Assembly (NCBI GenBank): GCA_965637545.1
Contig: OZ281494.1
Coordinates: 1,116,001-1,180,000 of the forward strand
Length of the DNA: 64,000 bases
Direction of reading: 5' to 3'
Origin: Phallusia mammillata
Taxonomy: Eukaryota
Below are positions 1 to 64,000 of this stretch, piece by piece. A model generated the notes under the pieces. That model saw only the letters and a program-made list of their open reading frames with translations. It was not told where the DNA came from and did no database searches. Both the position numbers and the translations under genes were made by a program. Position 1 is the stretch's first letter, and each line of letters begins with the position of its first letter.

Positions 1-3000
1 GGGGATTACCCGGTGTTGTTACTGTTGCATTGGATGTGATGTTTGTGTTGATTGAACCAGTAACAATCACTATGACCTGAAATCACAAACATACCTTTTG
101 TTTATGTACATGTTACGTTCCGGTTTCCGGAAAAGTTTATTAACGTTATTTTTCTGCTAAAACAGTGATTACTCAATTAACAAAAACACAGGCGACAGGC
201 TCTTACCTCAATGACATACGAAGTAGAGTGAGTGAGATCTTGTATTGTTGTGGAGTAGTCGAAATATGGAACAGAGACTGTTTGATTCAAACCGTCCACT
301 TGAATTTCAACCTGCATGTATATTGACATCAAATAACTGTTTAGCCACATACAAACTTGGTTTATACCTGAGCTGTTAGATTGTTGTTGTTGATGAATTG
401 ATCAAGTCCAGTCCAACTGACAAGCACAGTTGAAGCGTTGCATGGAAAAGTCTCGGCAGTCGTGTTTACTGTAATGCAAATAGGAAAGAAACATTGTGTC
501 AGGTTTTTAAAGTTTGTGTTTGCTAACATAGGTTGCTCGCTTCTTCGGAATTGTTCTTGCGAAACACTGGTATGAACTATGATTATTTTCCATACCTTCA
601 GTGCAACACTAAACCAAATTACGTTTGGTTTCTGCGACAATTTTTACCTTTAGGGTAACAACTTTGGGGGGGATTGCCCGGAGTTGTTACTGTCAGATTG
701 GATGTGATGTTTGTGTTGATTGAACCAGTGATAATTACTGTGACCTGAAATACTCAAATTACTTAAATGCATTCCGATAAAAAAGTAGTTGATTGTAAAT
801 AAAAGGTGTCCTGCAACTACTTCGATTAACTCAAATAGGAAAAAAGTGTTTTCACCTGAATTTCATAGAATGTTGAATACTCTAGATCTTCTATTAAAGT
901 CGAATTGTCAGAATATGGAACAGAGATTGTCTCACTTAAACTCTCGACTTGAATCACAACCTGTTTTAGTTTCGTTTTAAATGGTGGTTTAACAAACACA
1001 AACTCGGTTTAAACCTGCGCTGTTAGATTGTTTTCGTTGATGAATTGATCAAGTCCAGTCCAGCTGACAAGTACAGTTGAAGCGTTGCATGAAAATGTCT
1101 CTGCAGTCGCGTTTACTACAAAAAGGTGTTGTTAAAATTTAAAATTCAAATTTCACAGGTGACTTGTTTGCTTACATGGAGGATAGCAACTTGATGGGGG
1201 ATTTCCATACGTTGTTACTGATGTGGAAGTTGAGACGTTGGAGTTTAAACATCCAGTGAGCATTGTAGTAACCTGTTTTTATGTTTTCTAGTTAAGCTAT
1301 CTTTGTTTAAATATATTTGAAACTGTTTTCGTATCCGTTATTTCCTGGGTAAATTAGAAAACTACGTTGTAGTCCAATAACTTGATTCATATTTAAGCAT
1401 ACTATTTACAGGTTAGAACATTTTGTGCAAATATAATAGTTCAATAGCACTTGTCGAAGCGTAATCATGTTTTGTACAAAAATTCTGGCTCTGATTTTTT
1501 TTGTTATTGAACTGACCATTCATACTCCCCAATTAAATTTCAATAAATTGTGTTCAAATACTTTCAAACACACTTCACCTCAAAACTATATTGTGTTGCA
1601 AAACTTAGGTTTCCAATGGTTGTTGATAGATTTGCATACGGTGCCATAATTCTTCGGTTGAGCTCCAAAACATAAATCTCAACCTAAATACAACATTTAC
1701 AAAATGTTCAAATCGGGGATATTAGAAAAACGATTGCGGTTTTGCAACTCTACAGAACAGTGATTGTCGAAGGCCTCTGGATTGTGCCATTCTTCCTCAT
1801 AGCTGATGTACTATCTCCATTCTCGAAGATTTGTTTCAGTATTGAAGCGATATTTAAGAATAAATTAACATGTAGTTCCGAGTGCATTAAAATAGAGCAT
1901 TTGTTTATTCGCAGGAACTTGCTTTAGCCTCGCTTGACCCCTCCAAACACAGCTCCTATCGTAGTTGTGGACAAAACTTACGTAATTTAAATTGGGTAAA
2001 GAAAATGTCTTGACAGATCCGCTGGGTAGAGCTCTGTAGCGAATCTACATACCCGCGATTGTGCCTTTTTCTCGCATTATCCCTTTGATCGTGTTTGTCG
2101 CGCGTAAAGTCTTGTTCTTTTTTAATTTTGCCTATAAACAACGAACTCTCGCCATTGCGGTATATAATCTGTTACCTCTGCGAGTAGATCATAGCTTTCG
2201 ATGAACTGATCAAATCCAGTCCAATTGACCACCACAGTTGAAGCGTTGCATATATATTTATCCACAGTAGCTGTGACTTAAAAGTAAATCATCTGGTCAA
2301 ATGTCTATTTCGAAAGAAAATAAAATTAAATTTCAAAATTTCAAATTAGCTATAATATTACCAGGGAACATTGCAACTGTGTTTCAAATAAATCAAATCA
2401 ACTTAAACAGATTGTTTGAAGTTTACTCTCAATTTCGAATCAATTAACTACTTACATTTCACTTGACAAGCGTAGTAAGCTGGTTCCCCACTGCAGTTCA
2501 TGCTTGACTGCTCCCAGCCGATCCCATAATGCAATGCTCCCTGTTGGCAGGTTGTAACGTTGGGAACAGAAAAGTTTGCCGGAGATCCGTCGCTCCAATA
2601 CCAACCATTTAACGACTTGTTGTAACGAGCTCCAATTAGGACTTTAATGTCTGAAACCATTTTTGCGATGATTTTTAATGACACGAGCGACAGATTTTTA
2701 TGGTTGCAAGTTTTTGAAACCAAACGCTCACCTGGTGCCAGGAACGATCCTTTATAAGTTGTAAAGTTTTTGTACATTTCATTAACACTCCTCAACTTGC
2801 TTGAACGTAATTCAGTGTTATCATAATTGAATATATCTTTTTGGCGCTTGTTAATGTTAACATCGGAAAAGAAGGAATACTGAAACATCCACTCTGCAAA
2901 TAATTAGATAGCCTTATACAAGGTTTTGATTTGACTAAAAAGGAATAAATATGAAAAAAACGTGTACGTTGGTGTGATATATATAGCAAACTCGTGAAGA

Positions 3001-4403
3001 TTAAATGTGTAAAAACCGGTTGGTTTCATGGAATTTTTGACTGCCGAACTTTTATTCGATGCTTGACACAATGTCCACTTCACAATGCTGTTTGTCCTCC
3101 TGCTTTTGTTCTATTTTTGGTAACCACACAAGTGCTTATTAGCCCTGGTCACTTATATTAATGTAATAGTTCTATAGCTTTGTTACGGTCCTTAGCTACA
3201 AGATTCATTTTTGCGGTTGCCCAGTTACATTCCGCTACGTGGACATAATAGTCTTTTTTATTGTGCGTTGGTAAGGGTTCTTAAAAACGTAACGTTGGTG
3301 GTGTGATATACTAGCAAGTGTTTAGCGCCGAGCATTCATTCTATATTGTTATCCTATGGTACAATCGGATTTACTCCACGTTGAATTCTCAAACCTATTT
3401 CTGCTGGTGTGGATATTGCTCAGTTCTGAATCAATAAACGGTTCTACGGCAGGGGTCGGCAACCTTTTAGGCGACGCGTGCTTATTGACTTGTTATTTCA
3501 ATGTCTTAATGACCTCGCGTACCAACCTTTTTTCTATATAACAGTGGTTCGTGCCAGCTGATATCAACAATAAAAAGAAAGCAGAGCGTTTTGTGCATGT
3601 AATGCCAAATTTTAAAAGGCGAAAACCTTTATACTTACGGTGTATCACACAATCTTCTCCAATAGTTGCAATCCACCTCTCAGCATTAGGACCACTTCCA
3701 TAATTGCAAAAGTAAATTTGTTGCATGGTATTGTTAGGATTGCTATTTAACAAATTGCACGTTTTTATGGTTACAGATGTGTTAATGTTAAAATCTATTA
3801 CCTCTTATACAAGTCGAAATACCACAGATGTCCGAGTAATTCCGCACTATTCCAACCGTCTTCAGTCGAACTATTTGAGTACTTGTATCGTTCATGTTGG
3901 AACGTGTCGTAAAAAATATAAATTCTCTGCAAATCTGAAAAGATATTTGTTATTTATTTTTTCACAAATATTTCTAAAATAAAATGTGCAGCCATGAGTA
4001 AAGTCGTCTTTGCAATAATGATTTAAATCCTTTTTTGTGTCAAAATAAGTTTATTGTTAGATTTGTGGAATACAAGTTGGGGAAATAAACTATCATCAAC
4101 TTGAACCTGTTGTGTATTTGTCAGTCATGAGTTCAGTAAGAGTTGTGTTGATCTGTGGGTCATCAGTCATTGCAAGATTTCCACCCAGCAAAGAACATTT
4201 TTCCTGTGCAGTGTTTGCATCCACAAGATCGTCAGATAATATCAACACACTGTCCTTCACTGCTTGCATGGTTTTGTTACAATCTGACAAAAAATGAATG
4301 TTATAGCGTTGCTGTGATTGTTTACAGTATTCTACTTCTTACTTGCAGCTGATGACCATTGTGCAAGCAGCATCACGAAAAACGCCACAGTCCTGTTTAT
4401 CAT
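1..4403 (-). CDS. G9: CTLD-CTLD-FN3(>=3) receptor, 5' part only (3' end lies beyond the window start, cytoplasmic type unknown)
   Basis: Signal exon 4343-4403 ([20 protein letters not shown]). CTLD exons at ~4105-4283 ([14 protein letters not shown]), ~3797-3937, ~3630-3740, ~2730-2895 and ~2456-2655 ([19 protein letters not shown]...C...W...C..YYACQ). FN3 exon triplets start at ~2278, ~1118 and ~470 ([15 protein letters not shown] / STLIEDL.YSTFYEIQ / [26 protein letters not shown]). GT-AG junctions are in frame where I checked them. Confidence 0.8.
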
Positions 4404-8014: not shown

Positions 8015-11000
8015 TCACTTGTAGTTTGAATAAGTGTCAAAGTCGGACAGATATTGCATGACGGCCGAGTAGCAGTATTTGTAGAGTTCCTGTAAAACCA
8101 TCAACATTGTATGAAGAGTCAGTCTTCATATCTCAATCTAAAGTAAAACGTTACCTTGTTGTCTACCATATTCGGTCTCATATCTCTCAGGTCTTTCACA
8201 GTTCGGAATACATCCACCCGCTTTTGTGTCTTCAAACGCTCAAAAATGTTCACCAGAGCGATGAACGTCCCAGTTCTTGTAGATCCGTTACTGAAAACAT
8301 GACAACATTATTTGATCTTCTTAACAGATGTATTATTTTCAGCAAGTTTTATTGGAGGTTTTTCGCATATCTTCGAATTAAAATATTCATGATTTTTAGT
8401 AGCACTTTTTGACAGGCCTATGGCACATTTTGCACGTTGGCTTAACAACAATAACGTTAGAAAATTAATAAGTTAATTGTTTTACCGAATCTCCAGAGTT
8501 TCTGTAAAATGCAAACAAAGCATTAACACATATTGGCAATTGTGTTTAGACTTCTGCCGTTGCATTTCCTCCTTAATTTTGATGAAATCCATTTTTTTCG
8601 GGGGTCGTTCCACATAACTCCATCCCTTGACTTGCAAAAGTATCAATTGCTGGGCAGTCTAAAAAAACAAATTTTCATTTTACCATGTTTAAAAAATATA
8701 TTACGAAACGTCTTTATATTTAAAAAAGTTGAATCATACTGTTACCAGATTCACCGTTTTGAAAGATTTTAGGCCTACATTTTTGTGTTCTAATGCACTC
8801 CAAAACATTCTAATACGTGTAAATTGTTGGGACATACTAGTGTGCAAAGAAAATTAGGTAATCAATAGAAATCCTCTTTAACTTTTTTCCACTTACGAAA
8901 GCGTTGGTTGCAGACTGGATGTTAACAGCTATCAGATTGTAAACGTTACGTTCAGTCACATCACGTACAGAAACCGAAATGTCTTCATATTGTAAAGCTG
9001 CATTTCTAATAACCTAAACGAGAAACAAATCAATAAAAAGATAATTAATAACGAGTTGGTTTTGAGCTATACTTCAATGCTGTTGTCGAAATCAACTATA
9101 ACCAACGCCTTTTTTTCCACAATCATCTTCCAGAAATTTTCCTTTTCTCCAGCAGCAGGGCTTCTTGCAGCAATAAAACATTCTGAAGATCCATGTTCCT
9201 GTGTACAATATAAACGTAAACTAAATTAAACTTAACTAAACTTGTGAATGACTTTATGAAACTAAAAAAAATACATTTAGCCAATGTTAAAGCCTGTAAA
9301 GCATTCATGCTGCCAAACCCTATGTGTAACAATCCTTGTTTAAACGCCTTAAAACCAATTATTATTAGATTATAGGTTTCTGAGAAAATGTTATCATTGC
9401 ATCAGCCAAGACAAGATGATATATATGGACAGATGGAAACTTAGTGGTTTCTTATATCACCTGAATATACGAAGCATCCAACTGTTGTAGAGTGTGACGT
9501 TGGTTGTCCCCAATTTTGACCAAAGTGTTCTTGTCTAAAAACAAAAGTTTGAGTGATAAGTTAAAATGTCAAACATTTTTCAATTATTTAGTTACATGTT
9601 CTCAGCTGTGGGTGACTTTCCTGCCATTCCTCACCAAATCTCCACAATGACAATGTCTTGAATTCTTGCTCTTGCATTTCCAAGCTGTAAACAAATTCTT
9701 CATTGTTGACTAAGGTTTTAATGATCATTCATTTACATTAAAAGCAAACAAAGACACTAAAAGAGAGACAGTGTTTGTGTACATCGCCAAGATAGCGCGT
9801 GTCGAAAGCTTTTAATCGATTTATAATTTGAAAAATTAAACAAATTGAACAGTCCTCTGCCATGTACCTACATTTAATGCATTAAACCTACAAATGCTCA
9901 CATTTCACTTGAAGTCATCGATTGTAGTTCGGTCACATCTCTATCTGTTTTCTCCAAATTCTCTCGCTCCATAAGCAGTTTGTAGACGAACATGTATTGT
10001 TTCTGTAGATACACAAGGTACGATAGACATGATACAATACACATTGTAATTGAAACGCCAGAGTATGAGTTATCAAAGATTACCGCATTTTGAATCATGT
10101 CTGTTCGGTTTTCTCTCATTCTCAACACGGTTCGTGGCACATCAACTGTTCCTTTGTCGTCAAGTTCATGAAACAAAGTGTCCATCGCTATGTAAGTACC
10201 TGTGCGGCCCACTCCAGCACTGCATACAAACATATGCTTTATTGATAGAACAAAACAACATAGGGTTTGTCAACGCTTTACCTGCAGTGCACAATGATTG
10301 GAGCATTTGTGTTTTGCAAATCATCGACCATGTTACGTAGGTGGATCATGTTGGATGTAGTTACTGGAATCCCATGATCGGGCCAAGTTGTAAACTGCAA
10401 CTGTGTTATGGTTCGTTGCTTCTAAGGATAAAACGCAATTGATCATGCTATTGAATGTTTCCAAAAATTTGGCGTGATAAATACGCTTGTCAAAAGGGTT
10501 TTATTACCAGACCAGGGATATATCTTAGTTTGTTTAACATTTACGTTTTTTTGGTTTACACATACTTTGTTTGAGGACAAAATTAATTGTCGTTGAACGA
10601 TTCCACCGATAGTCATTTCAAATTGACTTCTAACTTTCGACAGCAATTTAATTTCGGATTCAATGTCCGGTCAGTATTTTTCACATTTCGACTGCATGAA
10701 ACAAGTCAAAAAAGTTACAGTTTATTGAAAGTTAGAGATTGAAAATTAATTGTTAGCAAGCAGCTCTGTATTTTTGTCCGTGTAAAAACATGCCTAATCA
10801 AGAAATTTTTAACCGAAATGCGGTCCTGGTTTATACAATCAAACATCTCCGAGTTAATGAGGTTTTCCAAACATACTAACAAATGTATATTGACGTTAAA
10901 AGAAAAGCAAGTCCCAGAGTTAACCTTTCTTTTTTCCCTCAAGCCAGTTAGCATTACGATGATGTTGGAGTTTTCCTGCCAAACCATCAACCAGAAATCG

Positions 11001-14000
11001 TTGATTGTCTCCTTCTTCGGACCCTGAGTGGCGATGAACTTCCTCTCGTTATCGTAACCCGGTATATAAGCGGCGTTGATGTAATCGTTTCCACCGCTTC
11101 CTTGCAAAACCACTCGAGCATGATCGTCTGTTGAACAAATATTAGGAATAGCGAATATCTTTTTGCTCGTGTTGCAGTTTCATGGCAGATGGCATTCATT
11201 AAATTTTTTAAAAGAAATTTTATAAGCATGTAGAAATACCAATACATTATCATGTTTGACTTTGTACGTTGTTTCCGTTTAATCTTTTTTGTCATTATGA
11301 GGAATTTTATTAGTTATAAACAAAACCATTGAAATTAAAAATTAACTATGAATAAAAATAATTTGCTTCTGCTTATAGGCTTTAGCTATCATGCTGTTTT
11401 GCTGCATTCTTTTTTGTCACTGAAACAATATTGAACAATCGATTCCGGCAATCAATTAAGTGTTCTTATTCTCGTTGTGTAAATGTTTACCTAATTTCTG
11501 CCGAAATGAAACATTCAGCAAATTTTGTAATCAGCACTTAACAGTTTAATACTTAACCGAATACTTACAAGGGAAAATATTCTTGTATCGGTTTCTCACA
11601 GCATTTTCTGACAACTGTGACACGTCCCTTGTTCTTTGGTTGTTTTTGCTCTGTTTTTCAATTTCCTAAAAGAAAACATACAACTTTTTATTACGATAAG
11701 CGTTTTTTCATGTCTTTGATAAATCTACTCTCTGTTTATCAAATCTGACCAACGAAATTAAAACCTGTACCATATAAGGGTGTGAAAAAAAGTATAAATT
11801 GCAACGTTGCCAAACAAACCTTGAACTCGTTGACAAATAGAAGTCCTGACTCGACATTTTTCTTGAACACGTCAAACAAGTTGCTGACTCTGCACCCGGG
11901 AGAAGGAGATAGGTTTTCATACGTAACGTTTTCTTTATAAACCAAAATACAAGGTGTTGCAAGCATGAATTTGTATGCCCTTTTTTTCAATAAAGTTCTT
12001 GAAAACTTTGTAGTGACTGAGGAGCATAACATAAATGCAAAATTTACCTGAGGAAGAAGTTTCGGTTGAAAACTCAACTCGTGAAAGCTGATCTTTGTTC
12101 ATCCTGCAATCCCAGAAGCTTTGTTTTTCATGTTTTATTTTATGCCTTCTTAAACTCAAGCCATACAAGACATTCTTTGTAATAGCGCATAGCGGTTTTG
12201 ATTTAGTCAACTAAAGGTGTGAATCGATTTTTTCAACATCAGTTAAAGCTACAACGTATTTTCGCCTTAAGTCATATTAAGTTATATCTGGACAAACCTG
12301 TGCCGACGTATAAAGGTAACCACCAGTCCAACCATGGCAAGTAGCAGAAGAAACAGCCCGATCACCAGTCCAGTAATCATTCCAACACTCGTTGCAGATT
12401 TTATGTTATCTCCAGGAAAACAACTTGGAGGGGGATTATCCGGAGTTGTCACTGACATATTGCATGTGATGTTTGTGTTAACGGAACCAGTGACCATGAC
12501 TGTGACCTGAGATATCAAAACCCATTTTTGTTTATTAGTTGCAAAGAAATGTTCGATTGAGAAGCATGCAAAAATGTAAATATGCTTACCAGAATTTCAT
12601 ACGAAGTAGAGTAAGTTAGATCTTGTATTAAGGTTGAATTATCTGAGTACGGAGTAGAGTATGTTTGATTCAAACCCTGCCCGTCAATTTTAACCTGCAT
12701 GTATTTTGCTTTTTAAATAACCTTTAAACAACACACAAATTCGCTTAAACCTGTGCTAGCAGATCGTTGTTGTTGATGAATTGATCAAGTCCAGTCCAAC
12801 TGACGAGGACAGTTGAAGCGTTGCATGAAAATGTCTCTGCAGTCGCGTTTACTACAAAAATCGTTGTCAGATTTAAGGTTTAAATTCCATACGCGACATG
12901 TTCGCTTACGTGGAGGATAGCAACTTGATGGGGGATTTTCATAAGTTGTTACTAGTTTGGATGTTGAGACGTTAGCAGTCAGACATCCCGTTAGCATTGC
13001 AGTGATCTGTTAATTTTTATTAGATGGTAAAATAGAATACTAGTTTGTTTAGGTTTTATAGTTTCGCTATCTTTGATGAAAGTAATTCGATACTGTTTTC
13101 GTCTCCGTTATTTTCAGTGGAAAATAAGAAAAACTAGGTTGTAGTCCAATAACTTGATTGATACTAATATTGAGCTGGTCATTCATAATGAACAAACAAA
13201 TTCAAGTAAATTATGTTCAAATAGTTTCAAACACACTTTACCTCAAAACTATATTGTGTTGCAAAACTTAGGTTTCCAATGGTTGTTGATAGATTTGCAT
13301 ACGGTGCCATAATTCTTCGGTTGAGCTCCAAAACATGAATCTCAACCTAAATACAACATTTACGAAAAGTTCAAATCGGGGATATTAGAAACGATTGCGG
13401 TATTGCAACCCTACAGAACAGTGATTGTCGAAGGCCTCTGGATTGTGCCAACCTCTTCCTCATAGCTGATGTACTATCTCGATTCTCGAAGATTTGTTTC
13501 GGTATTGAAGCGATATTTAAGAATAAATTAACATGTAGCTCTGAGTCCATTAAAACAGAGCATTTGTTTATTCGCAGGAACTTGCTTTAGCCTCGCTTGA
13601 CCCCTCCAAACACAGCTCCTATCATAGTTGTTGGCAAAACTTACGTAATTTAAATTGGGTAAACAAAACGTCTCGACAGATCCGCTGGGTGGAGCTCTGT
13701 AGCGAATCTACATACCCGCGATTGTGCCTTTTTCTCGCATTATCTCTTTGATCGTGTTTGTCTCGCGTAAAGTCTTGCTCTTCTTTAATTTTGCCTATAA
13801 ACACCGAACTCTCGCCATTGCGGTATATAATCTGTTACCTCTGCGAGTAGATCATAGCTTTCGATGAACTGATCAAATCCAGTCCAATTGACCACCACAG
13901 TTGAAGCGTTGCATATATATTTATCCACAGTAGCTGTGACTTAAAAGTAAATCATCTGGTTAAATGTCTATTTCGAAAGAAAAACAAATTAGGCTATAAT

Positions 14001-51762: not shown

Positions 51763-52530
51763 TTGCAGCTAAAGGCGAGCTGCTCTGGGTTTTGTAAAAG
51801 AATGACCGCTGCAGTAATAGAGGAGGCAAAAGCTTGGAAGGAACAGCGCCATCAATACGCAAGGCATTCCAAGGACAGTACAAGTAAAAAAGCAAGGAAA
51901 CTCGTTTGGGCCACGCAATTTCCAGCGCTACTGCGCCTCTCAGATAAAGAAAAGGTACTCAAACCCAACTGTATGGTGACTTACAAACGACCACCCTCAC
52001 TCCAAGAACTGTTTTTATGCCCCAGGAAACTCGCTTTAGGGCGACTAAATCATTGCGCCCCATCAGGATGCTACCCCTGCGGGCGTTGTGCCCTGTGTGG
52101 CAACCATGGTAGCCACAAAATCGGCATGGTTAAATGTAGCGCATATCTACAAACCTCGATGCGCAGATTTAAGATCTCCCAACATCTAACATGTAGGAGT
52201 TATGGCATTTATGTCGCCACTTGCCTTTTATGCCATGAACAATATGTAGGCCAAACAAAAAATCGGTTTGCCACCCGGTGGTCGGGTCACCGCGCCATTT
52301 GGGCGAAGTTTGACACTTCGCAGCGCAATGACGGGACGGCGCTTTTGCACCACTTTAAAGACCGTCACCCCAACGAGTTTGCAAAAAAAACACCTATGGA
52401 AAGTTGTTATTGTGTCGCCTTTGTTGAACAACCACGTACTGCGGACCTGGATTTAGCCGAAGACAGATGGCTGAATAAAATTGATGCAAAAATTAACATT
52501 AAAAAAATGGTTTTACCCAGGTGTAAGTGA
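51763..52530 (+). CDS. C-terminal part of a Penelope-like polyprotein: linker, Cys motif and GIY-YIG endonuclease
   Basis: YKRPPSLQELFL linker, PCGRCALC, LTCRSYGIYVATCLLCHEQYVGQTKNRFATRWSGHR, ALLHHFKDRH, E..W...I. The frame stays open back to the inversion junction (~51729); the RT domain is absent. Confidence 0.85.
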   Translation: MQLKASCSGFCKRMTAAVIEEAKAWKEQRHQYARHSKDSTSKKARKLVWATQFPALLRLSDKEKVLKPNCMVTYKRPPSLQELFLCPRKLALGRLNHCAPSGCYPCGRCALCGNHGSHKIGMVKCSAYLQTSMRRFKISQHLTCRSYGIYVATCLLCHEQYVGQTKNRFATRWSGHRAIWAKFDTSQRNDGTALLHHFKDRHPNEFAKKTPMESCYCVAFVEQPRTADLDLAEDRWLNKIDAKINIKKMVLPRCK

Positions 52531-52707
52531 CGTGTGTTTTCCTTCGCCTTACACTTTTGCGGTTTTTATCTTTCGCGCGTTTCTTATCTTACATTGTATT
52601 GCGTGTTCACAGTTAGTTTAGTTTGCTAGGCTTTCAGTTGTGGAGTGACCGTGTTTGTTAAAGAACTATTGGCTTTTTTAATTTTAATCCCTTTTATTGC
52701 TTTCTGT

Positions 52708-52746
52708 AGACACTGAAGATGCTTTTTTCGCGAAATATATTTGTTT
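52708..52746 (+). ncRNA. Candidate minimal type I hammerhead ribozyme in the PLE terminal repeat
   Basis: AGACA-CUGAAGA-U-GC(UUUUUUC)GC-GAA-AUAUAU-U-UGUUU: 5-bp helix I (one G.U), conserved core, 2-bp helix II, palindromic helix III. Confidence 0.55.
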
Positions 52747-53418
52747 TTTAAAAGATTGTCAACTGATTTCAGCCTGGAAATAAAGATTTCCCAAACTTGC
52801 AATGATAATATTGCTAACAATATTTCTCTGCTGAAAACACATTATTTGCTTTTTCAGATGTGTTTTGAAGTTAGATTATGAAAAGTCTAATAAACGAACC
52901 CACACTTCTGCAAGATCAAACCTAATGCATTCTTATATAAATACCGTATCTTTTGCATTTAAAGTGTAAATTCGTACCTGTGTTTACGACGTATAAAGAT
53001 GATCACCAGCCCAACAATGACAAGTACCAGAAGCAACAGCCCGATCACCAGACCAGTAATCATTCCAACACTTACGGCAGGATTTGAGTTATCTCCAGGA
53101 AAACAACGTGGGTGAGGATTACCCAGTGTTGTTACTATTAGATTGGATGTGATATCTGTGTTGATTGAACCAGTGACAATTACTGTGACCTTTGATATAA
53201 AATAAGAGTGTTTGGGCGCACCAAATTATAAGAACTGTGCTTACCAGGATTTCATACAAGGTAGGGTTACATTCTTTGGTAATTATTTTACACATAGTTG
53301 TTTAGTGGCCTATCGGATTCAATTCTGCCATCAAACGAAAAGCATTGAATTCATGAATGAAATAAATGATTGTCTGTCGTTTAAAATATTTCAGGCAAAG
53401 TGGCAGGCGACCCCAATT

Positions 53419-54410: not shown

Positions 54411-57400
54411 TTATGTTATTGTTTCGTATGTAGGGTTTTCATTTGTTGGTTTGTAGTTTTCGTACTCATGTTCATCTGTAGTCTTGTCTGTAGTGTTTCT
54501 GCAAAACAGATTGTACAACCCATTGTTAACAGTTTGAAGGTTTTAACTCATAGAATAAGTTATTGGATGAGTAATGTGCTGGGTTTAAACTTTGTACGAT
54601 AAACTTGAGTTATTACGGTGCAAATTTTCCTTACCTTCGTTACTCTGATGTGGAAACTGTTCGTGAGTCTCTTGTTTTCCAGATATTCTGTGGAAACATA
54701 TTTCGCTTATTATGATGCAATGTGGGAATAACGAGTGTTTAGAATCGAAAGTTAGTTGGGTGGAAGCGCAATCTGACCAAGGGTTTGTGGTTCTAATCCC
54801 TGACCGTTTCGATTTTGAACAAAGTAAAAAAAAAATAGCTCAGTTGTTGGAACAAAAATAATTAAAACAGCTGCTGTTGCATGCACCTGCGTCTTCGGCG
54901 AATAAACATGACTATTAGCCCAACAGTGACAAGTAGCAGAAGCAACAAGCCGACCACCAGACCAGCAATCATTCCAACATTCGTTGCAGGATTGGCTCCA
55001 GGAAAACAGCTTTGAGGGGGATTACCCGGAGTTGTTACTGTCAGATTGGATGTGATGTTTGTGTTGATTGAACCAGTGACAATCACAGTGACCTGCAATA
55101 CAAAGATGTTTTGTTGTTGTACGTGAAAAACTATAATGGCATGTGTCAAAAACCGATGGATTATAATTCTACAAAAAGTTACTTACAACAATATGGTATG
55201 AAGTAGAAAGCTGGAGATCTTGTATTATTGTCGTGTTATCTGAATACGGGACGGAGATAGTTTGATTCAAACTCATGACAACAATCTGAACCTGAAGCAA
55301 GGTACAATTTGATTCAATAATTTATGTTTGTCGACTGGAAATCAAACCAAATCAAGACACAATATATTTTGTACATGTGCTGTTAAATTGTTGTTGTTGA
55401 TGAATTGATCAAGTCCAGTCCAACTGACAAGCACAGTTGAAGCGTTGCATGCAAATGTCTCTGCGGTCGTTTTTACTGCAAAATTTTGTTTGGAAATATT
55501 TAGAAATGAAATCCAATAAGTAGCACGTTTGCTTACCTGTGACCTGAAAATATTAAACAGTAGACCTAAATAACTATGAAGCGACTGCATGTCTTCACTT
55601 CAAACATTAGATTATCAAGGTCTGGGCTTCAAAGTATTTCGGAAACTGATACGATGCTCCTGCATGTGAAAAACAAACAATTTGTACCTACTATACTGTG
55701 CTTACGGTGATGTTATAGTTAGTGGCAAAACTGAGGTTTTCAATGGTTGTCGACAGAATAGCGTATGGTGCCATGAATTTTCTGTTCATGTCCAAAACAC
55801 AAATTTCAACCTAAATAAAACATTTGTTAAAATCAAGAACGAATGTAATAAACTATATATCACCTCGGCATAAAGTTTGTTGTTGCGGATGAACTGATCA
55901 AGTCCAGTCCAAGTGACCACCACAGTTGAAGGGTTGCATAGAAATGTATGCATTGTCGCTTTAACTAGAAAAAATTTGAATTATTCGTTCATAAAAAGTA
56001 TATTGTCTATAAAAATATGTGAAAAACATATTTGCAAAAAAACCATTGGATCACAAAATAATGTCAAGAATACGTTTATTTGCTTTTGCTCACTTAACTG
56101 GTTACTTGAAACTACTCACGTTTCACTTGGCAAGCGTAGTAAGCCGATTCACCACTGCAGTTCATGCGTGACTGCTCCCATCCGATCCCATAATGCAACG
56201 CTCCCTGCTGGCAAGTTGTAACGTTGGAAACGGAAAAGTTTGCCGGAGATCCGTCGCCCCAGCACCAACCATTTAACGACGTGTTGTAACGAACTCCGAC
56301 GAAAACGTTAATGTCTGGAAAAAAATTACCAATAGTATTTTTAAAGCGAACGGTTTTGTCGGCGTTTCCAAATGTTTGGAGACCGAACGCTCACTTGGTG
56401 CCAAGAACGATCCTTCATATCTTGTAAAAGTTTGATACGTCTCATTGACACTTCTTAACTTGTTTGAAAGTGGCTGTGTGGTGCTTCCATAGTTAAATAT
56501 GTCTTTTTGATGCTTTCTTGTGTCAGTGTCAGAAAACAAGGAATATTGTAATGTCCATCCTGCAAACAATCATTATCATTTAAGGTTCAAAAAGCCTTCT
56601 TAAAACAGCTTTTGACTTGGCTAACGTAATAAAGTAAAAATTGAAATGTGTAAGTTAAAATGAGATCGATGACAAACTGGTAACAGTAAAGAGCTTACTG
56701 TTTTAGTTATTGACCTAAAAACAGAAAATCATTTTCAATTTTCACCATTTGTTTATTCTGATATTTAGATGCTTGATAGGCACAAACGATTTGCAAATGT
56801 TGATTTGTCTTTTGATGTTTAGCATCAACGTTTCATAGTGTGTCAGAAAAAAATGCATAGCTTTTAAAAACGCAAACCATTCCATTTCCCGTTGGCCATA
56901 AGTTCTTCACAATTGCCTCCAATTGTCACATTCCACCTCAGGTCATTGGGATTAAGTTCATAATTGCAGAAGTAAACTGTTTGACTCGTGTTTTCGGGAT
57001 TGCTGTTGGAAAAATCGTATGGTTTGAGCTTAAATTTTGTTTCTGTCCAAGGTGTTACCTTTTGTACAAGTCGAAATACCATAGATGTCCGAGAGATTTT
57101 GTACTTTTCCAGAAGTTCACTTCAGCCGAATCATATGAGTACTTATAATGTTTACCGGTTTCTATTCCGTAAAAAATATAAACCCGCTGCAAATCTAAAA
57201 CAACAATAAAAGTCTGTTTGTAAAACATGTGATGATTTAGTGACAATGCAAACAAGATTTTGACTTGACTTGACTATACCGTGTTCCTAAAAGTGTTATC
57301 TTGCATCAAATTAAACCTGTCGTGTATTTGTCTGTCATGAGTTGAGTGAGCGTTTTGTTGATCTGTGGGTCATCAGTCATTGCAAGATTTCCACCCAGCA

Positions 57401-57626
57401 AAGAACATTTCTTCTGTGCAGTGTTTGCATCCACAAGATCGTCAGATAATATCAACACACTGTCCTCCTCTTCTTGATGAGTCTTTGTACAACCTGACAA
57501 AAAATATTTCTTACAGTTTTCGTGGATTTCATAATATAGTTGGTTTCGAGGCAACTTACTGTTGTGTTGAGTAAATGAGCATCGAACAAGAACCAACAAC
57601 ACCACGATCTTCCAACCACAAATCAT
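54411..57626 (-). CDS. G2: CTLD-CTLD-FN3x2-TM receptor with short tyrosine-motif tail (no phosphatase)
   Basis: Signal exon 57560-57626 (MICGWKIVVLLVLVRCSFTQHN). CTLD exons 57318-57495, ~57060-57196, ~56880-57008, ~56390-56560 and ~56115-56313. FN3 exons 55955-55185 include a 7-nt microexon. TM exon ~54887-55092; tail exon ~54635-54687; last exon ends ...EHEYENYKPTNENPTYETIT* (the acceptor choice is ambiguous). Confidence 0.72.
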
Positions 57627-58644: not shown

Positions 58645-61600
58645 TCATTGGAAGTTTGAATATGTGTCGAAATCAGACAGATATTGCATGACGACCGAGT
58701 AGCAGTACTTGTACAGTTCCTTAACAACATATCACAAGTTAAAAAGATGTCCAATTGTCTAGCCACTCAGCCTTAAAAGCATTACCTTGTTGTCAACCAT
58801 ATTCGGTCTCATATCTCTCAGGTCTTTTACAGTTCGGAATACATCCACCCGCTTTTGTGCTTTCAAACGATCGAGAATGTTCACCAGAGCGATGAAGGTT
58901 CCAGTTCTTGATGATCCGTTGCTAGAAAACATGTCAATATCATTTTTTTTTGTGTACTTATTGATGATTTTTAAAAACTGTCATTAGAATTGCACTTGTA
59001 CATTCAATTCATAACTAAAATTGTTGCAGCGAATCTGGTTGCTCTGTGTAAAATGTAATCGAATGTTACCTGCAGGCAACCAGCACATAAGGGCAGTTCT
59101 GTTTGGCCTTTAGTCGTTGCATTTCCTCAATAATTTTGATGAAATCCATTTCTTTCGGGGGTCGTTCCACGTCATTTCATCCCTTTACTTGCATAAGCAT
59201 CAATTGAATATCAGTCTGAAAACAGGTGAAACTATGTTTGATTATGCAACGTTTTAAAGCCGGTCTTGAAAAGCAAAAAAAAAAACACACGTGGTTTTCA
59301 TTCAATTGCTATGTGGTGCTATTTGTTTCTGGGCGCTTTCGTATTCTAATACATTATTTAATGCCAAATGGTTTACACACATTTGACCACAACTAAAATT
59401 GTTCGGTTATGAGTAATATTATTTCAAAGTTATCAACTTACAAAGGTCTTTGTTGCAGACCAGACGTTGACAGTTATCAGATTGTGAACGTTGAATTTAT
59501 TCACATTACATACAGATACCGAAATGTCTTCATATTGTAAAGCTGCATTCATTGGAATCTAAATAAAATTTAAAGTTTTATTACGTAATGAAACTTTGCT
59601 TTAAAAAAGCGAATTTACATCAATGATATTCTCCAAATCAATGACAACCAAAGCTCTCTTCTCCACAATCATCTTCCAAAAATTTTCCCTTTCTCCAGCA
59701 GCAGGATTTTTTGCAGCGATAAAAAATTCTGAAGAACCTTGTTCCTATATTCAAAACTAGATTAAAGTGGAACAAAGAAAAGTTAGTTCACGAACAAATG
59801 TTTTGTCACAAACACAAAGATCATTTACATTCAGACGTGTAAAGCAAATAAACTTTTTGACATTTTACATGAACGGTTTGTCAATGATGTCTGTGCGTAA
59901 AAACGACTTTACTGTAAAACACATTAGTACATACGCCAACAATTGCATTTGAAATCGCGATGTGATAAGGAATTGCGTAGTTTATAAAATCACCTGAATA
60001 TACGAAGCATCCAACTGCTGTATAATCTCAAGTTTCTTGTTCCAAATTTTTACTGCCGTGTTCTTATCTGAACACAATATTTAATATGGTTGAAGGTCAA
60101 ACAATGTGAGAAATTAACTTACATGTTCTTAGCTGTGGGTGATTTTCCTGCCATTCCTCACCGAATCGCCACATTGACAATGTTTTGAATTCTTGGTCTT
60201 GCATTTCTTTGCTATAAAACAAAAGCTTTATTGCTGCTCACACGATTTCAAAGCTAGTTGTAACTGCCGTTTAAATGATAATCTCAACAAAGTGACTACT
60301 AATGTGGTACACCAACAAATCGCTTAACAGGAATTAGACTTGTAAACTGGAAAACAAGTCATGTTATTTGATCTACGAAACACAAAATGAGTTACATTTC
60401 ACTTGAGGTCATCGATTGTAGTTCTTGCACGTCTTTATCTGTTTCTGTTAAATTCTTACGCTCCGTAAGAAGTTTGTAGACGTACATGTACTGTTTCTAT
60501 AAAAATGCAAATTTAGAAACAGTTATGGTTAACGCGTTGCTGGTTTTAGCTACATTATAAAACTCTCCTCTCGAAAAGAAACATTTTGATTTTATACCAA
60601 ATTCTTTCGTGTCTTTTGGCTGTGTCTTAGTTAAGTTAGCGTTTGTTGCACATTACCGAGTTTTGAATCATGTCTGTTCGGTTTTCTCTCATTTTTAACA
60701 CAGTTTGCGGTACATCAACTGTTCCTTTGTCGTCAAGTTCATGAAACAAAGTATCCATTGCTATGTAAGTACCGGTGCGTCCCACTCCAGCACTGCATAC
60801 AAACAAGTGCTATGTTAACTGATCAAAATAACATATGGTTTTTCAAGTCTTTACCTGCAGTGCACAATGATTGGAGCATTCGTGTTTTGCAAATCATCGA
60901 CCATGTTACGTAGGTGGATCATGTTGGATGTAGTTACTGGAATCCCATGATCGGGCCAAGTTGTAAACTGCAACTGTGTTATGGTTCGTTGCTCCTGAAA
61001 CACAAACCAAGTAATTGCACGAATTATTGCGTCATATTTACATACCAAAAACGTGGCGCCCACATGTCGTTTAAAATTGTGCGATTCAAGAAAGTTTTTC
61101 CAAGACAAATACTACATTGTTGGTGGTTTACATTTTATGGTTACATTTTTGCCATTTAGCACATACCCTGGTTGTGGATAATTCGAACTGTCGATATATG
61201 ATTCCTCCTAGACTTGATTCATGTTGTGTTCGAACTTCCAAATTCGACGACAATTTGATTTTGGAGTCCATTTCCGGCCAATATTTTTCACACTTTGTCT
61301 GCATTTCAAAACTATTTAGTTATCACTGGTCAAACAATATACCGTTTTCCCCATTAACTTGTTGTAAGATTCGATTTTGCCAGTCAATGTATATTTGCCA
61401 TAATGTAAACCACAAAAAAACAAAAAAAACTCAACTTTTCCTTTTTCCACCAAGCCAGTAAGCATTACGATGATGTTGGAGTTTTCCTGCCAAACCATCA
61501 ACCAGAAATCGTTGATTGTCTCCTTCTTCGGACCCTGAGTGGCGATGAACTTCCTCTCGTTATAGTAACCCGGTATATAAGCGGCGTTGATGTAATCGTA

Positions 61601-64000
61601 TCCACCGTTTCCTTGCAAAACCACTCGAGCATGATCGTCTGTAAAACAATGACACGAAAAAAATGTTTAACCTTGTTAATCTAACTACTTCACAATTTAT
61701 GTTTCAGAAGTGTTACAACAAATATCCAGCGTAATAAAAAACCGTTAACTAATACTAGTCAAATAACAATACCTCTTTTTGTTAGTAACTGTTACAATCA
61801 ATCAAAATAAAACAAAATTTACTCCAGTTTTACCGTGGATGTGAATTCTGTTATAACGCGGAAACAAATGTACAACAACTATGCCCATTATAAATAAAGG
61901 GATTTCTAATACTTACAAGGATAAATATTCTTGTAGCGGTTTCTCACAGCATTTTGCGGTAATTGTGACACGTCCCTTGTTCTCTCGTTGTTTTTACTTT
62001 GGCTTTCGACTTCCTGAAAAATGATCAAACCAATGAAAGGAGTGTTAAAGGTTTTTTTTTCTTGAATTGCTCGGACATAAATGTTTAATATAGTTTTCTC
62101 TAACCTCAAACTCGGTTACAAATAGAAGTCCTGACTCAACATTTTGCTTGAACACCTCAAACAATTTGATGATTCTGCAGTTTTTTGAGGGGACAACAGA
62201 AGAAGATATGTTTTCGTATATCACGGGTCCTGTTGAAACCATTATGTATATTTCAGCATGGCTCTACGGTGTTGTTTTCATCAATTTTATTAGCAATTTT
62301 CCTATTAGTTAATTAGCAATTTTCTATAGTAGAAGTTACCTGCTGGTGACATTTGCGATGAAAACTCTACTTTCGAAGGCGGATCTTTATTATTTCTGCA
62401 AACACAGAATAGCTTTAAGTTAAACTTTTTTATCTTTTTTGTTTCTATTCATTTGTACGTGAGTGTTTAATCTTTGCTTTAATAAAAAACAAGTTTGTAT
62501 ATTTAATCGTGATCTAAATTTCAGTCGGTGGTAAAAATTTGGTTACCGGGCATCATGAGCAGAAGAATTTTATCCAAAATGTTTTGATCAAAAAGATTAA
62601 AGAAATATATACGTTTTGTGAGCTAAATCAGTTAATGAAAAACCTGTTTCGACGTTTAATTATAACCACCAGCACAGCAATGACAAGTACCAGAAGCAAC
62701 AGCCCGATCACCAGACCAGCAATCATTCCAACACTAGTCGCAGGATTTGTTCCAGGATAACAGTTTGGAGGTGGATTTCCCAGAGTTGTTACTGTCAGAT
62801 TGGATGTGATGTTTGTGTTGATTGAACCAGTGACTATGGATGTAACCTGTGATACAAAAAAATACTTTCAGTTTAATTTTCAACAAAACGATTTTTAAGA
62901 TTTTTTTCTGTTTATTTTTGCTTGGTCAAATATGAAAGAGAACAAGTCCTTACCAATATTTCATACAAAGTAGAGTGAAGGAGATCTTCTATCATAGTTG
63001 ATTTATTGCAATAAGGAACAGAGATTGTTTGATTCCAACCCTCGACTTCAATTTCAACCTGTATGTAATTTGGATGCAATGATGAATTTAGTTTTTTTTT
63101 TCAGAAAATTTGTCACACTTTCAGGTTCGTTTATTAAACAATAAAGACTCAAAAAACAACAACAAAGAGTTTCCATTAGACCTGCGCTAACAGATCGTTG
63201 TTGATGAGAAATTGATCAAGTCCAGTCCAATTGACAAGCACATTTGAAGCGTTGCAAGGAAATGTCTCCGCAGTCGAGTTTACTGGAATAAAAGATTTAC
63301 TGTTTGTGTTTTACAAAACTTGCAGTAATTCAACAAATATTGCAGGCGTTTTAAAAATCGTGTTTGTTAATCACTTGTCTGCACTCCATATTTCTGTTTA
63401 ATTTTACTAAAAATGTTACCTTTAGGATAGCAGCTTTGCGGGGGATTACCCGGAGTTGTTACTGTCACATTAGATGCGATGTTTGTGTTGATTGAACCAG
63501 TGACAATCACTGTGACCTGAAAGATATCAAACACGTAACTAGTCTTGTAGGTTTCACCTTAAATGTGTTAGATCAACTCTCAATGGAAAACAAATTCACC
63601 TGAATCTCGTACAACGTTGAGTGACTGAGATCTTCTATTAAGACCGAATTGCTAAAGTACGAAACTGAACTTGATTTGTTTAAACCCTCGATGTTTATCT
63701 CAACCTGCATGTAGTTTGGTTACAAATATCTGTTTGAGAAACACACAAACTTGCTGTCAACCTGCGCCACGAGATTGTTGTTGTTGATGAATTGATCAAG
63801 TCCAGTCCAACTGACAAGCACAGTTGAAGCGTTGCATGGAAATGTTTCTGCAGTCGCAATTACTACAATGTATAAAAATAAGCCACTGATTATAGATTGC
63901 AAAGTTAGAGAAACACTTTGCCTGTTTCTTGGGAATTAGGGTCGCTAAATACTTAAAATTTGCATCAATGTTTACCTTCAGGGTAACAGCTTGAAGGGGG
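58645..64000 (-). CDS. G1: FN3(n)-TM-PTP(D1)-PTP(D2) receptor tyrosine phosphatase, 3' part (5' end beyond the window), apparently intact
   Basis: FN3 exons 62950-63990; TM exon ~62640-62850; D1 with NRY, KCEKYWP, WPDHG and [10 protein letters not shown]; D2 with ACS.GSTRTG; ends ...DFDTYSNFQ* (58645-58647). No disruption seen. Confidence 0.82.

What the first reader, a model, noticed from the sequence alone, without database searches (positions are those of the whole stretch)
1..64000. Paired-receptor array: the same lectin-like/FN3 ectodomain coupled either to a tandem tyrosine phosphatase or to a short dual-tyrosine tail
Seen: at least nine loci share SP-CTLD-CTLD-(FN3)n-TM exons. G1, G4, G5 and G8 continue into D1+D2 PTP domains, whereas G2, G3 and G7 end in a ~45-60 aa tail with EYE(T/N)x...TYETIT*. 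G7 (tail) and G8 (PTP) have near-identical 5' halves. Established: vertebrate PTPRA/PTPRE have short glycosylated ectodomains without CTLDs; CD45 and CD148 have FN3 stalks; immune paired receptors (KIR, PIR, Siglec, SIRP, Ly49) share ectodomains but differ in signalling tails. Inference: this is a lineage-specific recognition system in which one partner supplies kinase-substrate tyrosines and the other carries its own phosphatase rather than recruiting SHP-1/2. I do not recognise this architecture as a described family, but cannot exclude that it has been reported.
Basis: partly seen in the sequence, partly recalled or inferred. Interest (0 to 1): 0.9.

Follow-up and report, generated by a model that had tools for sequence, protein, structure and literature searches.

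The report
Sea squirt lectin receptors: phosphatase or tail
This sea squirt carries a row of receptor genes that put one lectin-like outer part on either a built-in tyrosine phosphatase or a short two-tyrosine tail; the family is real, is shared with another sea squirt and was not found in the papers searched, but most copies here are broken and no immune role has been tested.

Summary
The observation largely holds. On the minus strand lie nine loci of one family. Four are phosphatase-type: G1, G4, G5, G8. Three are tail-type: G2, G3, G7. G6 is a fragment and G9 is cut by the window edge.

Only G5 is intact: 33 exons, all GT-AG, 1297 aa. It reads signal peptide, two divergent C-type-lectin-like domains, four FN3-like units, a membrane span, then PTP-alpha/epsilon-like D1 and D2.

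- G1, G8 and G7 carry nonsense codons.
- G4 has two frameshifting deletions.
- G8 has also lost a splice donor.
- G2 is degenerate and G3 is only a membrane-span exon plus tail.

One RNA contig splices G7's membrane-span exon to the first tail exon. The join to the tyrosine-bearing exon is not shown.

Clavelina lepadiformis has both gene types in two clusters. Outer-domain trees group tail genes with neighbouring phosphatase genes in both species. Silent-site distances differ between the 5' and 3' halves of the same gene pairs.

So pairing is supported. Opposite signalling and an immune role are untested, and the tail is not a canonical ITAM or ITIM.

The scan noted this family before on other DNA of this genome (s1-355916, s1-382224, s1-363998). 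I found no paper describing it.

The parts
58648..64000 (-). G1, phosphatase-type, 5' end cut by the window edge. At least 2 FN3 cassettes, membrane-span exon 62846-62644, then D1 and D2 to 58648.
   Evidence: Spliced alignment to G5: 591/651 identical, 16 exons. FN3 map.
59177..59179 (-). G1 nonsense codon, TGG>TGA, at the D2 'GW(S/N)D' position.
   Evidence: DNA alignment of the four paralogues.
54411..57600 (-). G2, tail-type and degenerate. Exons E2 57497-57317, E3, E4, E5a, E5b; two FN3 units, the first lacking a recognisable c exon; membrane-span exon 55092-54869; t1 54687-54635; last exon ending TYETIT* at about 54414.
   Evidence: The tyrosine frame is reached only from the third AG (exon start 54475), not the first (54498).
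51096..53189 (-). G3, a fragment: membrane-span exon 53189-52978, t1 51322-51255, t2 51199-51099 plus stop. No lectin exons.
   Evidence: GT-AG sites and frame are intact. Tail reads ...NEYETVIKFEQTNQRHTYETIT*.
39425..48389 (-). G4, phosphatase-type pseudogene. Intact outer part with 4 FN3 units, membrane-span exon 43643-43441, D1 and D2 to 39428.
42388..42389 (-). G4: site of a 19-bp deletion in D1 exon P2, just after YDHARVV. It shifts the frame.
   Evidence: DNA alignment against G1, G5 and G8.
40990..41000 (-). G4: 4-bp deletion in exon P7, at the start of D2. It shifts the frame.
36915..36940 (-). Remnant of a tail exon (...HTYETIT*) with stop codons upstream, between G4 and G5.
   Evidence: The flanks are homologous to the tail and 3' regions of G7 and G3.
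25566..34916 (-). G5, the only complete intact gene: 33 exons, 1297 aa. ATG at 34916, TGA after 25569. Lectin-like domain 1 spans exons 34796-34152 and domain 2 spans 34152-32994. Four FN3 units span 32816-30089. Membrane-span exon 30181-29979. D1 29344-27246, D2 27127-25569.
   Evidence: 32 introns, all GT..AG. Pfam Y_phosphatase. Motifs found: [21 protein letters not shown], and [10 protein letters not shown] in D2.
23897..24317 (-). G6, a fragment: exons E2 and E3 only, with a frameshift.
   Evidence: 76/101 identical, 2-nt frameshift at 24260.
17930..22806 (-). G7, tail-type. Signal-peptide exon 22806-22746, lectin-like exons to 20858, three FN3 units, membrane-span exon 18547-18333, t1 18171-18104, t2 18048-17933 plus stop.
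   Evidence: RNA contigs join 18333|18171, 20088|19752 and 18832|18775|18547, and join E4 to E5b.
18764..18766 (-). G7 in-frame TAA in FN3 unit 3, exon b (18775-18671, 105 nt, phase 0 to 0). Paralogues read Q or N at this codon.
8015..16094 (-). G8, phosphatase-type pseudogene. Intact outer part with 2 FN3 units, membrane-span exon 12506-12298, D1 and D2 to 8018.
10671..10673 (-). G8 nonsense codon, TGG>TGA, in D1 'KYWP'.
8505..8520 (-). G8: the splice donor of D2 exon P11 is lost (TGCAG|GTAA replaced).
   Evidence: DNA comparison of G1, G4, G5 and G8.
1..4403 (-). G9, 3' end cut by the window edge. Intact signal-peptide, lectin-like exons and at least 3 FN3 units. Its 5' half is 96% identical in DNA to G5's.
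   Evidence: 272/277 amino acids identical to G5.

Best explanation
Shown:
- This is a birth-and-death tandem array of an ascidian type I membrane receptor family.
- The outer part has two divergent, NK-receptor-like C-type-lectin-like domains without sugar or calcium motifs. A stalk of 2 to 5 or more FN3-like units follows, each unit built from a symmetric three-exon cassette.
- One gene type continues into a PTP-alpha/epsilon-like tandem phosphatase. D1 has all catalytic motifs. D2 is divergent. The C-terminus carries a YxNF site.
- The other type ends about 60 residues after the membrane in a tail with two tyrosines (YE[TN]x, then TYETIT-COOH).
- Both types predate the split from Clavelina.
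- Within clusters, the 5' recognition block is exchanged or homogenised between neighbours whatever their 3' end. Copies are also lost quickly: in this window only G5 is intact.

Inferred:
- The two types bind the same or similar ligands.
- Ligand-driven clustering brings a PTP-alpha-like enzyme next to the tyrosine tail. In vertebrates PTP-alpha controls Src-family kinases.
- The tail's YETI and YEN sites look like SH2 docking sites for Src-family kinases and Grb2.
- The ratio of the two forms would then set signal strength.
For: Gene models and lesions.

PTP identity:
- Pfam Y_phosphatase on G5 exons.
- The Clavelina orthologue matches PTPRA (6uzt, E 1.9e-110) and PTPRE best.
- G5's cytoplasmic part is 40.6% identical to Clavelina P0018.
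- The C-terminal TYSNF resembles PTP-alpha's YANF, recalled from memory.

Lectin-like domains:
- All 17 PDB profile hits for domain 2 are C-type lectin domains, led by KLRG1 (E 0.0055) and CD94.
- 27 of 31 hits for domain 1 are C-type lectin domains, led by CLEC6A (E 0.0037).
- Atlas searches and the UniRef name agree.

FN3: Atlas TM 0.58-0.66 to tandem fn3 models.

Both gene types in Clavelina, in two clusters.

Exchange of the outer part:
- Tree result.
- dS discordance.
- Block identities.

Transcription and splicing of a G7-like tail gene.

dN/dS is 0.13-0.29 in the PTP part and 0.2-0.5 in the outer part, near 1 in a few recent pairs.
Against: - No intact tail-type gene lies in this window. 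Three of the four phosphatase-type genes are broken.
- The join from t1 to the tyrosine-bearing exon is not shown by RNA. The one contig there has an odd 46-nt skip and keeps an in-frame stop.
- Pfam does not recognise Lectin_C or fn3, and the AlphaFold model was poor, with pLDDT 47.
- The window's tails and the Clavelina tails are not significantly alike as sequences.
- The tail is not a canonical ITAM or ITIM.
- There is no ligand, cell-type or signalling evidence.
- A Ciona gene called Ptpra is expressed in the notochord (PMC11728170), which points towards development rather than immunity. It is not shown to belong to this family.
Confidence: 0.55

Rival explanations
1. Only the phosphatase-type gene matters. 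It is the ascidian PTP-alpha/epsilon-type receptor phosphatase, working in development or adhesion. The tail-type genes and most of this array are decaying by-products of tandem duplication with no function of their own.
For: In this window every tail-type copy and 3 of 4 phosphatase-type copies are disrupted. A tail remnant and two fragments are present. Ciona Ptpra is notochord-specific.
Against: Phosphatase-less members with open frames and tyrosine tails are annotated in two Clavelina clusters. Tail tyrosines recur in all copies. An RNA contig is spliced. dN/dS is below 1. The family has several clusters in this genome.
Confidence: 0.2
2. The tail form is a phosphatase-less regulator. It pairs with the phosphatase form through the shared outer part or membrane span and tunes its activity or surface level. 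It is a decoy or dominant-negative partner rather than a signalling receptor in its own right.
For: Outer domains of neighbouring tail and phosphatase genes are kept alike. From general knowledge, dimerisation regulates PTP-alpha-type enzymes. The tail lacks canonical ITAM or ITIM motifs and has no charged membrane-span residue.
Against: Two tyrosines in acidic context are retained at the C-terminus in both species, which a pure decoy would not need. No interaction data exist.
Confidence: 0.15
3. The array is a self/non-self or gamete recognition locus. Its outer parts are polymorphic, and the two gene types give opposing signals as in missing-self recognition.
For: The array shows copy-number and cassette-number variation, a variable loop in lectin-like domain 1, null alleles and exchange of outer-part blocks. 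Paired activating and inhibitory allorecognition receptors are described in Botryllus (PMC11507803 abstract).
Against: Average dN/dS of the outer part is 0.2-0.5, with no clear positive selection. There are no population data. In Clavelina, P0014 and P0021 lie 92 kb apart among unrelated genes.
Confidence: 0.1

Closest known systems
Vertebrate R4 receptor phosphatases PTPRA and PTPRE
   Same: Tandem D1 and D2. These are the best PDB matches for the Clavelina orthologue: 6uzt at E 1.9e-110 and 2jjd at E 3.1e-103. The intact D1 motifs and a C-terminal tyrosine in a YxNF context match PTP-alpha's Grb2/Src SH2 site (recalled from memory).
   Different: PTPRA and PTPRE have short, domain-free, glycosylated outer parts and are single genes. 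Here the outer part is about 690 residues with two lectin-like domains and 2 to 5 or more FN3 units. The genes form arrays and have phosphatase-less partners.
Paired NK and myeloid receptors with C-type-lectin-like domains (Ly49, CD94/NKG2, NKR-P1, CLEC families)
   Same: The lectin-like domains lack sugar and calcium motifs. PDB profile hits are led by KLRG1, CD94, CLEC9A and Dectin-1 for domain 2, and by CLEC6A, CLEC4A, CLEC12A and CD72 for domain 1. Genes are clustered, outer parts are shared between members with different cytoplasmic ends, and there is block exchange and many pseudogenes.
   Different: Those receptors are type II proteins. Their inhibitory members use an ITIM to recruit SHP phosphatases, and their activating members use a charged membrane-span residue to pair with ITAM adaptors. 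Here the proteins are type I, the phosphatase is covalently attached, and the tail form has its own tyrosines and no charged membrane-span residue.
CD45 and CD148 (large-ectodomain receptor phosphatases that gate ITAM signalling)
   Same: An FN3 stalk plus cytoplasmic PTP. A size-variable outer part built from cassette exons. Plausible control of Src-family kinases close to tyrosine-motif receptors.
   Different: CD45 and CD148 are single genes without lectin domains and without a partner that shares their outer part. The PTP domains here are closer to PTPRA/E than to CD45.
Uncharacterised Clavelina lepadiformis proteins: LOC143463404 (P0018), P0021, P0037, P0038 and the 'C-type lectin domain-containing protein' P0014
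   Same: The same family. The outer part is 27-31% identical over 300-366 residues and the cytoplasmic part about 40%. Both a phosphatase type and a short tyrosine-tail type exist, and they are clustered.
   Different: In Clavelina copies are fewer and look intact. P0014 and P0021 lie 92 kb apart among unrelated genes. The tail sequences differ (...IYENDIEPESMYQNTYEK* and ...EVYHIPVTIDHIYEKPFQNKS*). These are automatic annotations only; I found no study of them.
Other ascidian receptor phosphatases with Pfam Lectin_C (Styela clava LOC120335086 and LOC120334842, Ciona LOC100183702, Clavelina 'Lar-like' P0123)
   Same: A lectin domain, with or without Ig or FN3 domains, joined to a tandem PTP in ascidians.
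   Different: Their outer parts do not match G5's at E 1e-5. They are separate families, and I did not check them for tail partners.

Membership tests
Classical receptor PTP, R4 (PTPRA/PTPRE) type | Two tandem PTP domains, D1 with the KNRY, WPD, CX5R and Q-loop motifs. | tested here: met
   Pfam Y_phosphatase on D1 and D2 exons. [21 protein letters not shown] and QNSKQY found in G5; D2 has [10 protein letters not shown] and WSD.
Classical receptor PTP, R4 (PTPRA/PTPRE) type | Closest sequence relatives are PTPRA and PTPRE. | tested here: met
   The Clavelina orthologue's best PDB hits are PTPRA and PTPRE, but LAR and PTPRS are close behind at E 1e-102. No phylogeny was built, so the subtype assignment is provisional.
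Classical receptor PTP, R4 (PTPRA/PTPRE) type | Short, domain-free, glycosylated outer part. | tested here: not met
   The outer part is about 690 residues with lectin-like and FN3-like domains and 29 N-glycosylation sequons.
C-type lectin-like domain superfamily | Significant match to the Lectin_C profile. | tested here: inconclusive
   No Pfam hit at E<=1 on window exons or E<=0.1 on P0014 and P0018. One fragment, P0006, hits at E 0.0066, below the cut-off. PDB profile searches give only C-type lectin domains at the top, E 0.004-0.03. Atlas and UniRef name agree.
C-type lectin-like domain superfamily | Calcium and sugar-binding motifs (EPN or QPD, plus WND). | tested here: not met
   Absent on reading both domains of all copies. 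The loop between the cysteines is short, as in NK-type domains.
Fibronectin type III domain | Profile or structural match to fn3. | tested here: inconclusive
   No Pfam fn3 hit. The stalk of the Clavelina orthologue matches tandem fn3 models at TM 0.58-0.66 and feature score 0.94. The window's cassettes show the B-strand W and the YEIQV F-strand pattern.
ITAM | YxxL/I, then 6-8 (up to 12) residues, then YxxL/I. | tested here: not met
   G7 and G3 read YETV-x11-YETI. G2 reads YENY-x8-YETI, where the first motif ends in Y rather than L or I. Clavelina reads YEND-x6-YQNT-YEK.
ITIM | [S/I/V/L]xYxx[I/V/L]. | tested here: not met
   The tails read HEYETV and PTYETI, with H or P at position -2. The phosphatase forms do carry VIYENL or VTYENL near the membrane, which fits the pattern.
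Paired immune receptors (KIR, Ly49, PIR, SIRP kind) | Closely related outer parts on members with different signalling ends, encoded in one cluster. | tested here: met
   G7 (tail) versus G8 and G5 (PTP): 85-92% amino-acid identity, dS 0.07-0.15. On the tree, tail rows sit beside PTP rows in both species.
Paired immune receptors (KIR, Ly49, PIR, SIRP kind) | The activating member has a charged membrane-span residue that pairs with an ITAM adaptor. | tested here: not met
   The membrane spans of G7, G3 and G2 hold no K, R, D or E.
Paired immune receptors (KIR, Ly49, PIR, SIRP kind) | Shared ligand, opposite signals, immune-cell expression. | not testable with these tools
   No ligand, signalling or cell-type data. 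The RNA runs are coded and shallow.

The most novel reading that the evidence does not exclude
Ascidians run a paired-receptor system in which the restraining arm is a covalently attached PTP-alpha-like phosphatase, not an ITIM that recruits SHP. The other arm is a tyrosine tail on the same NK-like lectin outer part. The two are kept matched by block exchange within clusters and are used for microbial or self/non-self recognition by blood cells. This would be an independent, or ancestral, solution to balanced immune recognition in the closest relatives of vertebrates.
Probability: 0.25. Interest if true: 0.85.

Novelty: new variant of a known kind. Interest (0 to 1): 0.6.

Why it matters
Receptor families that share an outer part but differ in signalling end are a hallmark of vertebrate NK and myeloid recognition. 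They were thought to rely on ITIM/SHP against ITAM adaptors.

Here the closest invertebrate relatives of vertebrates couple an NK-like lectin outer part either directly to a PTP-alpha-type phosphatase or to a tyrosine tail. The outer parts of neighbouring genes are kept alike.

If the two forms act on one ligand, two things become testable:
- how balanced tyrosine-phosphorylation signalling was wired before the vertebrate immune receptors;
- what the unknown outer-part function of PTP-alpha-type enzymes may once have been.

Even on the modest reading, it documents a fast-turnover gene family with modular exon cassettes and frequent gene death.

Tried and rejected
- Splice-site-only exon chaining chose wrong short exons. 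I replaced it with a protein-guided spliced aligner.
- Exon P3 of G5 was first drawn 21 nt too long, which created false frameshifts in G1 and G4. I corrected it from the conserved donor.
- Pfam on single exons and on the Clavelina proteins gave no Lectin_C or fn3 hit.
- The AlphaFold model of the P0014 outer part was too poor to search with: pLDDT 47, with only residues 205-270 confident. I ran no fold search.
- I tested whether the tail derives from the membrane-proximal exons of the phosphatase gene. Neither protein nor DNA similarity exceeded shuffles, so I rejected it.
- Whole-tail alignment between this species and Clavelina was not significant.
- Metagenome contigs holding related lectin exons (L003, L005, L006) showed no phosphatase or tail exons within reach and add nothing.
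- I first considered runs X2 and X3 to be RNA. Their intron coverage, and depth peaks at the exons most conserved among paralogues, suggest DNA from many copies. I did not use them as expression evidence.
- The protein word search found only the Clavelina proteins. The window's own proteins are not in those collections.

Full report
**Layout**

The window has 36% G+C and no N. It is a mosaic of tandem duplications, and all genes lie on the minus strand. Notes from the scan say the genome is a sea squirt's. Reading from 64000 down to 1:
- G1: phosphatase type, 5' end cut by the window edge.
- G2: tail type.
- G3: a membrane-span exon plus tail only.
- G4: phosphatase type.
- A tail-exon remnant at 36932.
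- G5: phosphatase type.
- G6: a two-exon fragment.
- G7: tail type.
- G8: phosphatase type.
- G9: 3' end cut by the window edge.

Four WPDHGIP motifs mark the D1 domains. Four ...TYETIT* ends mark the tails, one of them degraded. The sequence downstream of each tail exon is homologous to the sequence upstream of the next phosphatase gene: 17096-17661 matches 50002-50588, and 36415-36939 matches 50603-51120. The duplicated unit was therefore a tail gene followed by a phosphatase gene.

**Gene model**

I built a protein-guided spliced aligner. With it I derived a complete model for G5: 33 exons, 32 GT..AG introns, ATG at 34916, TGA after 25569, 1297 aa. In order the protein has:
- A signal peptide.
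- Lectin-like domain 1, on exons E2-E4.
- Lectin-like domain 2, from the end of E4 through E5a and E5b.
- Four FN3-like units. Each is a three-exon cassette of 97, 101 and 105 nt, so the cassette as a whole keeps the frame.
- A membrane span.
- A membrane-proximal region holding VIYENL.
- D1, with [21 protein letters not shown] and the Q loop.
- A divergent D2, with [13 protein letters not shown] in place of WPD, and no KNRY tyrosine.
- The C-terminus, ...TYSNFQ.

Pfam finds Y_phosphatase in the D1 and D2 exons at E 1e-27 to 1e-8.

**Damage**

Aligning the other loci to G5, then checking at DNA level, shows that most copies are broken.
- G1 has TGG>TGA in D2 (59179).
- G4 has a 19-bp deletion in D1 exon P2 (at 42389/42388) and a 4-bp deletion in exon P7.
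- G8 has TGG>TGA in the D1 'KYWP' motif (10673) and has lost the donor of exon P11.
- G7 has an in-frame TAA (18766-18764) in the 105-nt b exon of its third FN3 unit.
- G2 lacks a recognisable c exon in its first FN3 unit. Its last exon reaches the tyrosine frame only from the third of three AG acceptors.
- G3 and G6 are fragments.
- G9's outer part is intact as far as the window goes.

FN3 unit numbers are 4 (G4, G5), 3 (G7), 2 (G8, G2), at least 3 (G9) and at least 2 (G1).

**RNA**

Only one lay of reads was allowed, and I used it on G7. Contigs of RNA runs X1 and X5 match the predicted junctions:
- E4 to E5b.
- F1b|F1c (20088|19752).
- 18832|18775 and 18671|18547.
- The membrane-span exon to the first tail exon (18333|18171).

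So a G7-like tail gene is transcribed and spliced. The same contig then runs past the predicted t1 donor and skips 46 nt without GT..AG, keeping an in-frame TAG. The junction to the tyrosine-bearing exon is therefore not shown. The contigs differ from the window by 1-6%, so they may come from another allele or a close paralogue. Runs X2 and X3 look like DNA.

**Relatives**

An exhaustive profile search with the lectin-domain-2 exon found only 20 clusters. Most are exon-sized fragments from metagenome assemblies. Two are full-length proteins of Clavelina lepadiformis:
- P0014, 592 aa, with no phosphatase. UniRef names it 'C-type lectin domain-containing protein'. Its tail reads ...IYENDIEPESMYQNTYEK*.
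- P0018, 1090 aa, with a tandem PTP. Its relative P0021 has 1151 aa.

P0014 and P0021 lie 92 kb apart on one contig. A second Clavelina cluster holds P0037, P0038 and a third phosphatase-type gene that the annotation splits in two. It also holds two phosphatase-less members, whose tail ends ...EVYHIPVTIDHIYEKPFQNKS*. Both gene types therefore predate the split of the two ascidians. A short tail with two tyrosines in an acidic context recurs, although the tails are not significantly alignable.

**Domain identity**

Pfam does not see Lectin_C or fn3, and the AlphaFold model was poor. The evidence for the domains is weaker but consistent:
- A profile of domain 2 hits only C-type lectin domains in the PDB: KLRG1 at E 0.0055, then CD94, CLEC9A, Dectin-1 and NKR-P1.
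- A profile of domain 1 hits 27 C-type lectin domains among 31 matches, led by CLEC6A at E 0.0037. All match its N-terminal half only.
- Atlas feature and structure searches give Lectin_C families for both domains.
- For the stalk, Atlas gives tandem fn3 at TM 0.58-0.66.
- No EPN, QPD or WND motifs are present.

I therefore call these NK-type lectin-like domains. Domain 1 is the less certain. The PTP part of the Clavelina orthologue matches PTPRA (E 1.9e-110) and PTPRE best, with LAR-type enzymes close behind.

**Exchange of modules**

Silent-site distances disagree between the gene halves.
- G5-G8: dS 0.05-0.12 in the lectin domains and first FN3 unit, but 0.29-0.53 in D1 and D2.
- G4-G5: dS 0.5-0.6 in the lectin domains, but 0.16 in D1.
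- G7 (tail) is 85-92% identical in amino acids to G8 and G5 (phosphatase).

On a tree of outer parts from both species, each of the four tail-type rows sits beside phosphatase-type rows. The tail label needs 4 changes, forced by well-supported branches. G7 groups with G8, G5 and G9 at 96/99 support. The Clavelina tail gene on L008 groups with P0038 at 96/93. Outer parts thus follow genomic neighbourhood and not signalling type, through block exchange or conversion.

dN/dS is 0.13-0.29 in the phosphatase part. It is 0.2-0.5 in the outer part, near 1 in a few recent pairs. This shows relaxed constraint but no clear positive selection. A 4-6 residue variable loop sits at the start of exon E3.

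**Mechanism (inferred)**

The two forms probably see the same or similar ligands. Clustering would place a PTP-alpha-like enzyme next to a tail whose YETI and YEN sites resemble Src-family and Grb2 SH2 docking motifs. Both the enzyme's role as a regulator of Src-family kinases in vertebrates and the motif resemblance rest on established knowledge, not on tests here.

The simple reading of 'activating tail against inhibitory phosphatase' is weakened in three ways:
- The phosphatase form carries its own tyrosine motifs.
- The tail is neither an ITAM nor an ITIM.
- The membrane span has no charged residue.

The rivals are a decaying array around one ordinary phosphatase gene, a phosphatase-less regulatory partner, and an allorecognition locus.

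**What is known**

Seven literature searches found no description of this architecture or pairing. A Ciona gene called Ptpra is notochord-specific with four YXNX motifs; the paper does not mention lectin, and the passages read do not describe its outer part (PMC11728170). Public ascidian protein sets hold many other receptor phosphatases with Lectin_C, but their outer parts are unrelated to G5's.

The scan has noted the same family in other places of this genome, and one follow-up judged it real but the immune logic unproven. I reach a similar view independently.

**Verdict**

This is a real and unusual gene family: a new variant of the paired-receptor and receptor-phosphatase themes. This window holds mostly damaged copies. 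Function is untested.

Noticed in passing
window 51274-52841 (ORF 51763-52527, + strand): A 255-aa ORF with a weak GIY-YIG nuclease hit (E 6e-4, below Pfam's cut-off). It is flanked by inverted repeats and sits in the 1.65-kb intron between G3's membrane-span exon and its tail exon, so it is probably a mobile element. A weak GIY-YIG ORF also lies upstream of Clavelina P0014 (L001 3928-4392).
   Followed up: partly
window 18033-18104: RNA contig X1 record 1 runs past the predicted donor of tail exon t1 and skips 46 nt (18079-18034) with no GT..AG. That is a net +9 nt against the GT-AG model, and an in-frame TAG is kept. It could be an allele, a paralogue or an assembly artefact.
   Followed up: partly
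window 21133-21294: RNA contig X1 record 4 has only 72 nt between exons E4 and E5b, where exon E5a is 162 nt. That is 30 codons shorter, suggesting an alternative splice site or a paralogue with an in-frame deletion in lectin-like domain 2.
   Followed up: no
L007 and L008 (Clavelina contig CAUIVY010000065.1): A second Clavelina cluster holds three phosphatase-type genes and two phosphatase-less family members. One phosphatase-type gene is split by the public annotation into a 522-aa and a 596-aa product (L008 23415-28092).
   Followed up: partly
proteins P0042, P0058, P0059, P0064, P0074, P0078, P0084, P0097, P0098, P0100, P0123: Styela clava, Ciona intestinalis and Clavelina have further receptor phosphatases with Pfam Lectin_C, some also with Ig or FN3. 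Their outer parts do not match G5's. Lectin-bearing phosphatases seem a general ascidian theme.
   Followed up: partly
window 34405-34440 and the same place in the paralogues (start of exon E3): A 4-6 residue stretch between the conserved IFY and (R/H)YKYS differs in every copy: NTFQHE, NTFPNE, KLVNHE, DTFQHE, RRKKNTQ, GIETGKH. In-frame 3-nt indels occur nearby.
   Followed up: partly
window 33189-33269: In G5 the 81-nt intron between E5a and E5b is open in frame, so the two exons read as one 151-aa ORF. In G7 the same intron holds stop codons.
   Followed up: yes
window 18166-18210 and 51325-51340: A long T run lies directly upstream of the acceptor of tail exon t1 in G7 and G3. The reads tool treated it as a repeat and cut alignments there.
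   Followed up: no
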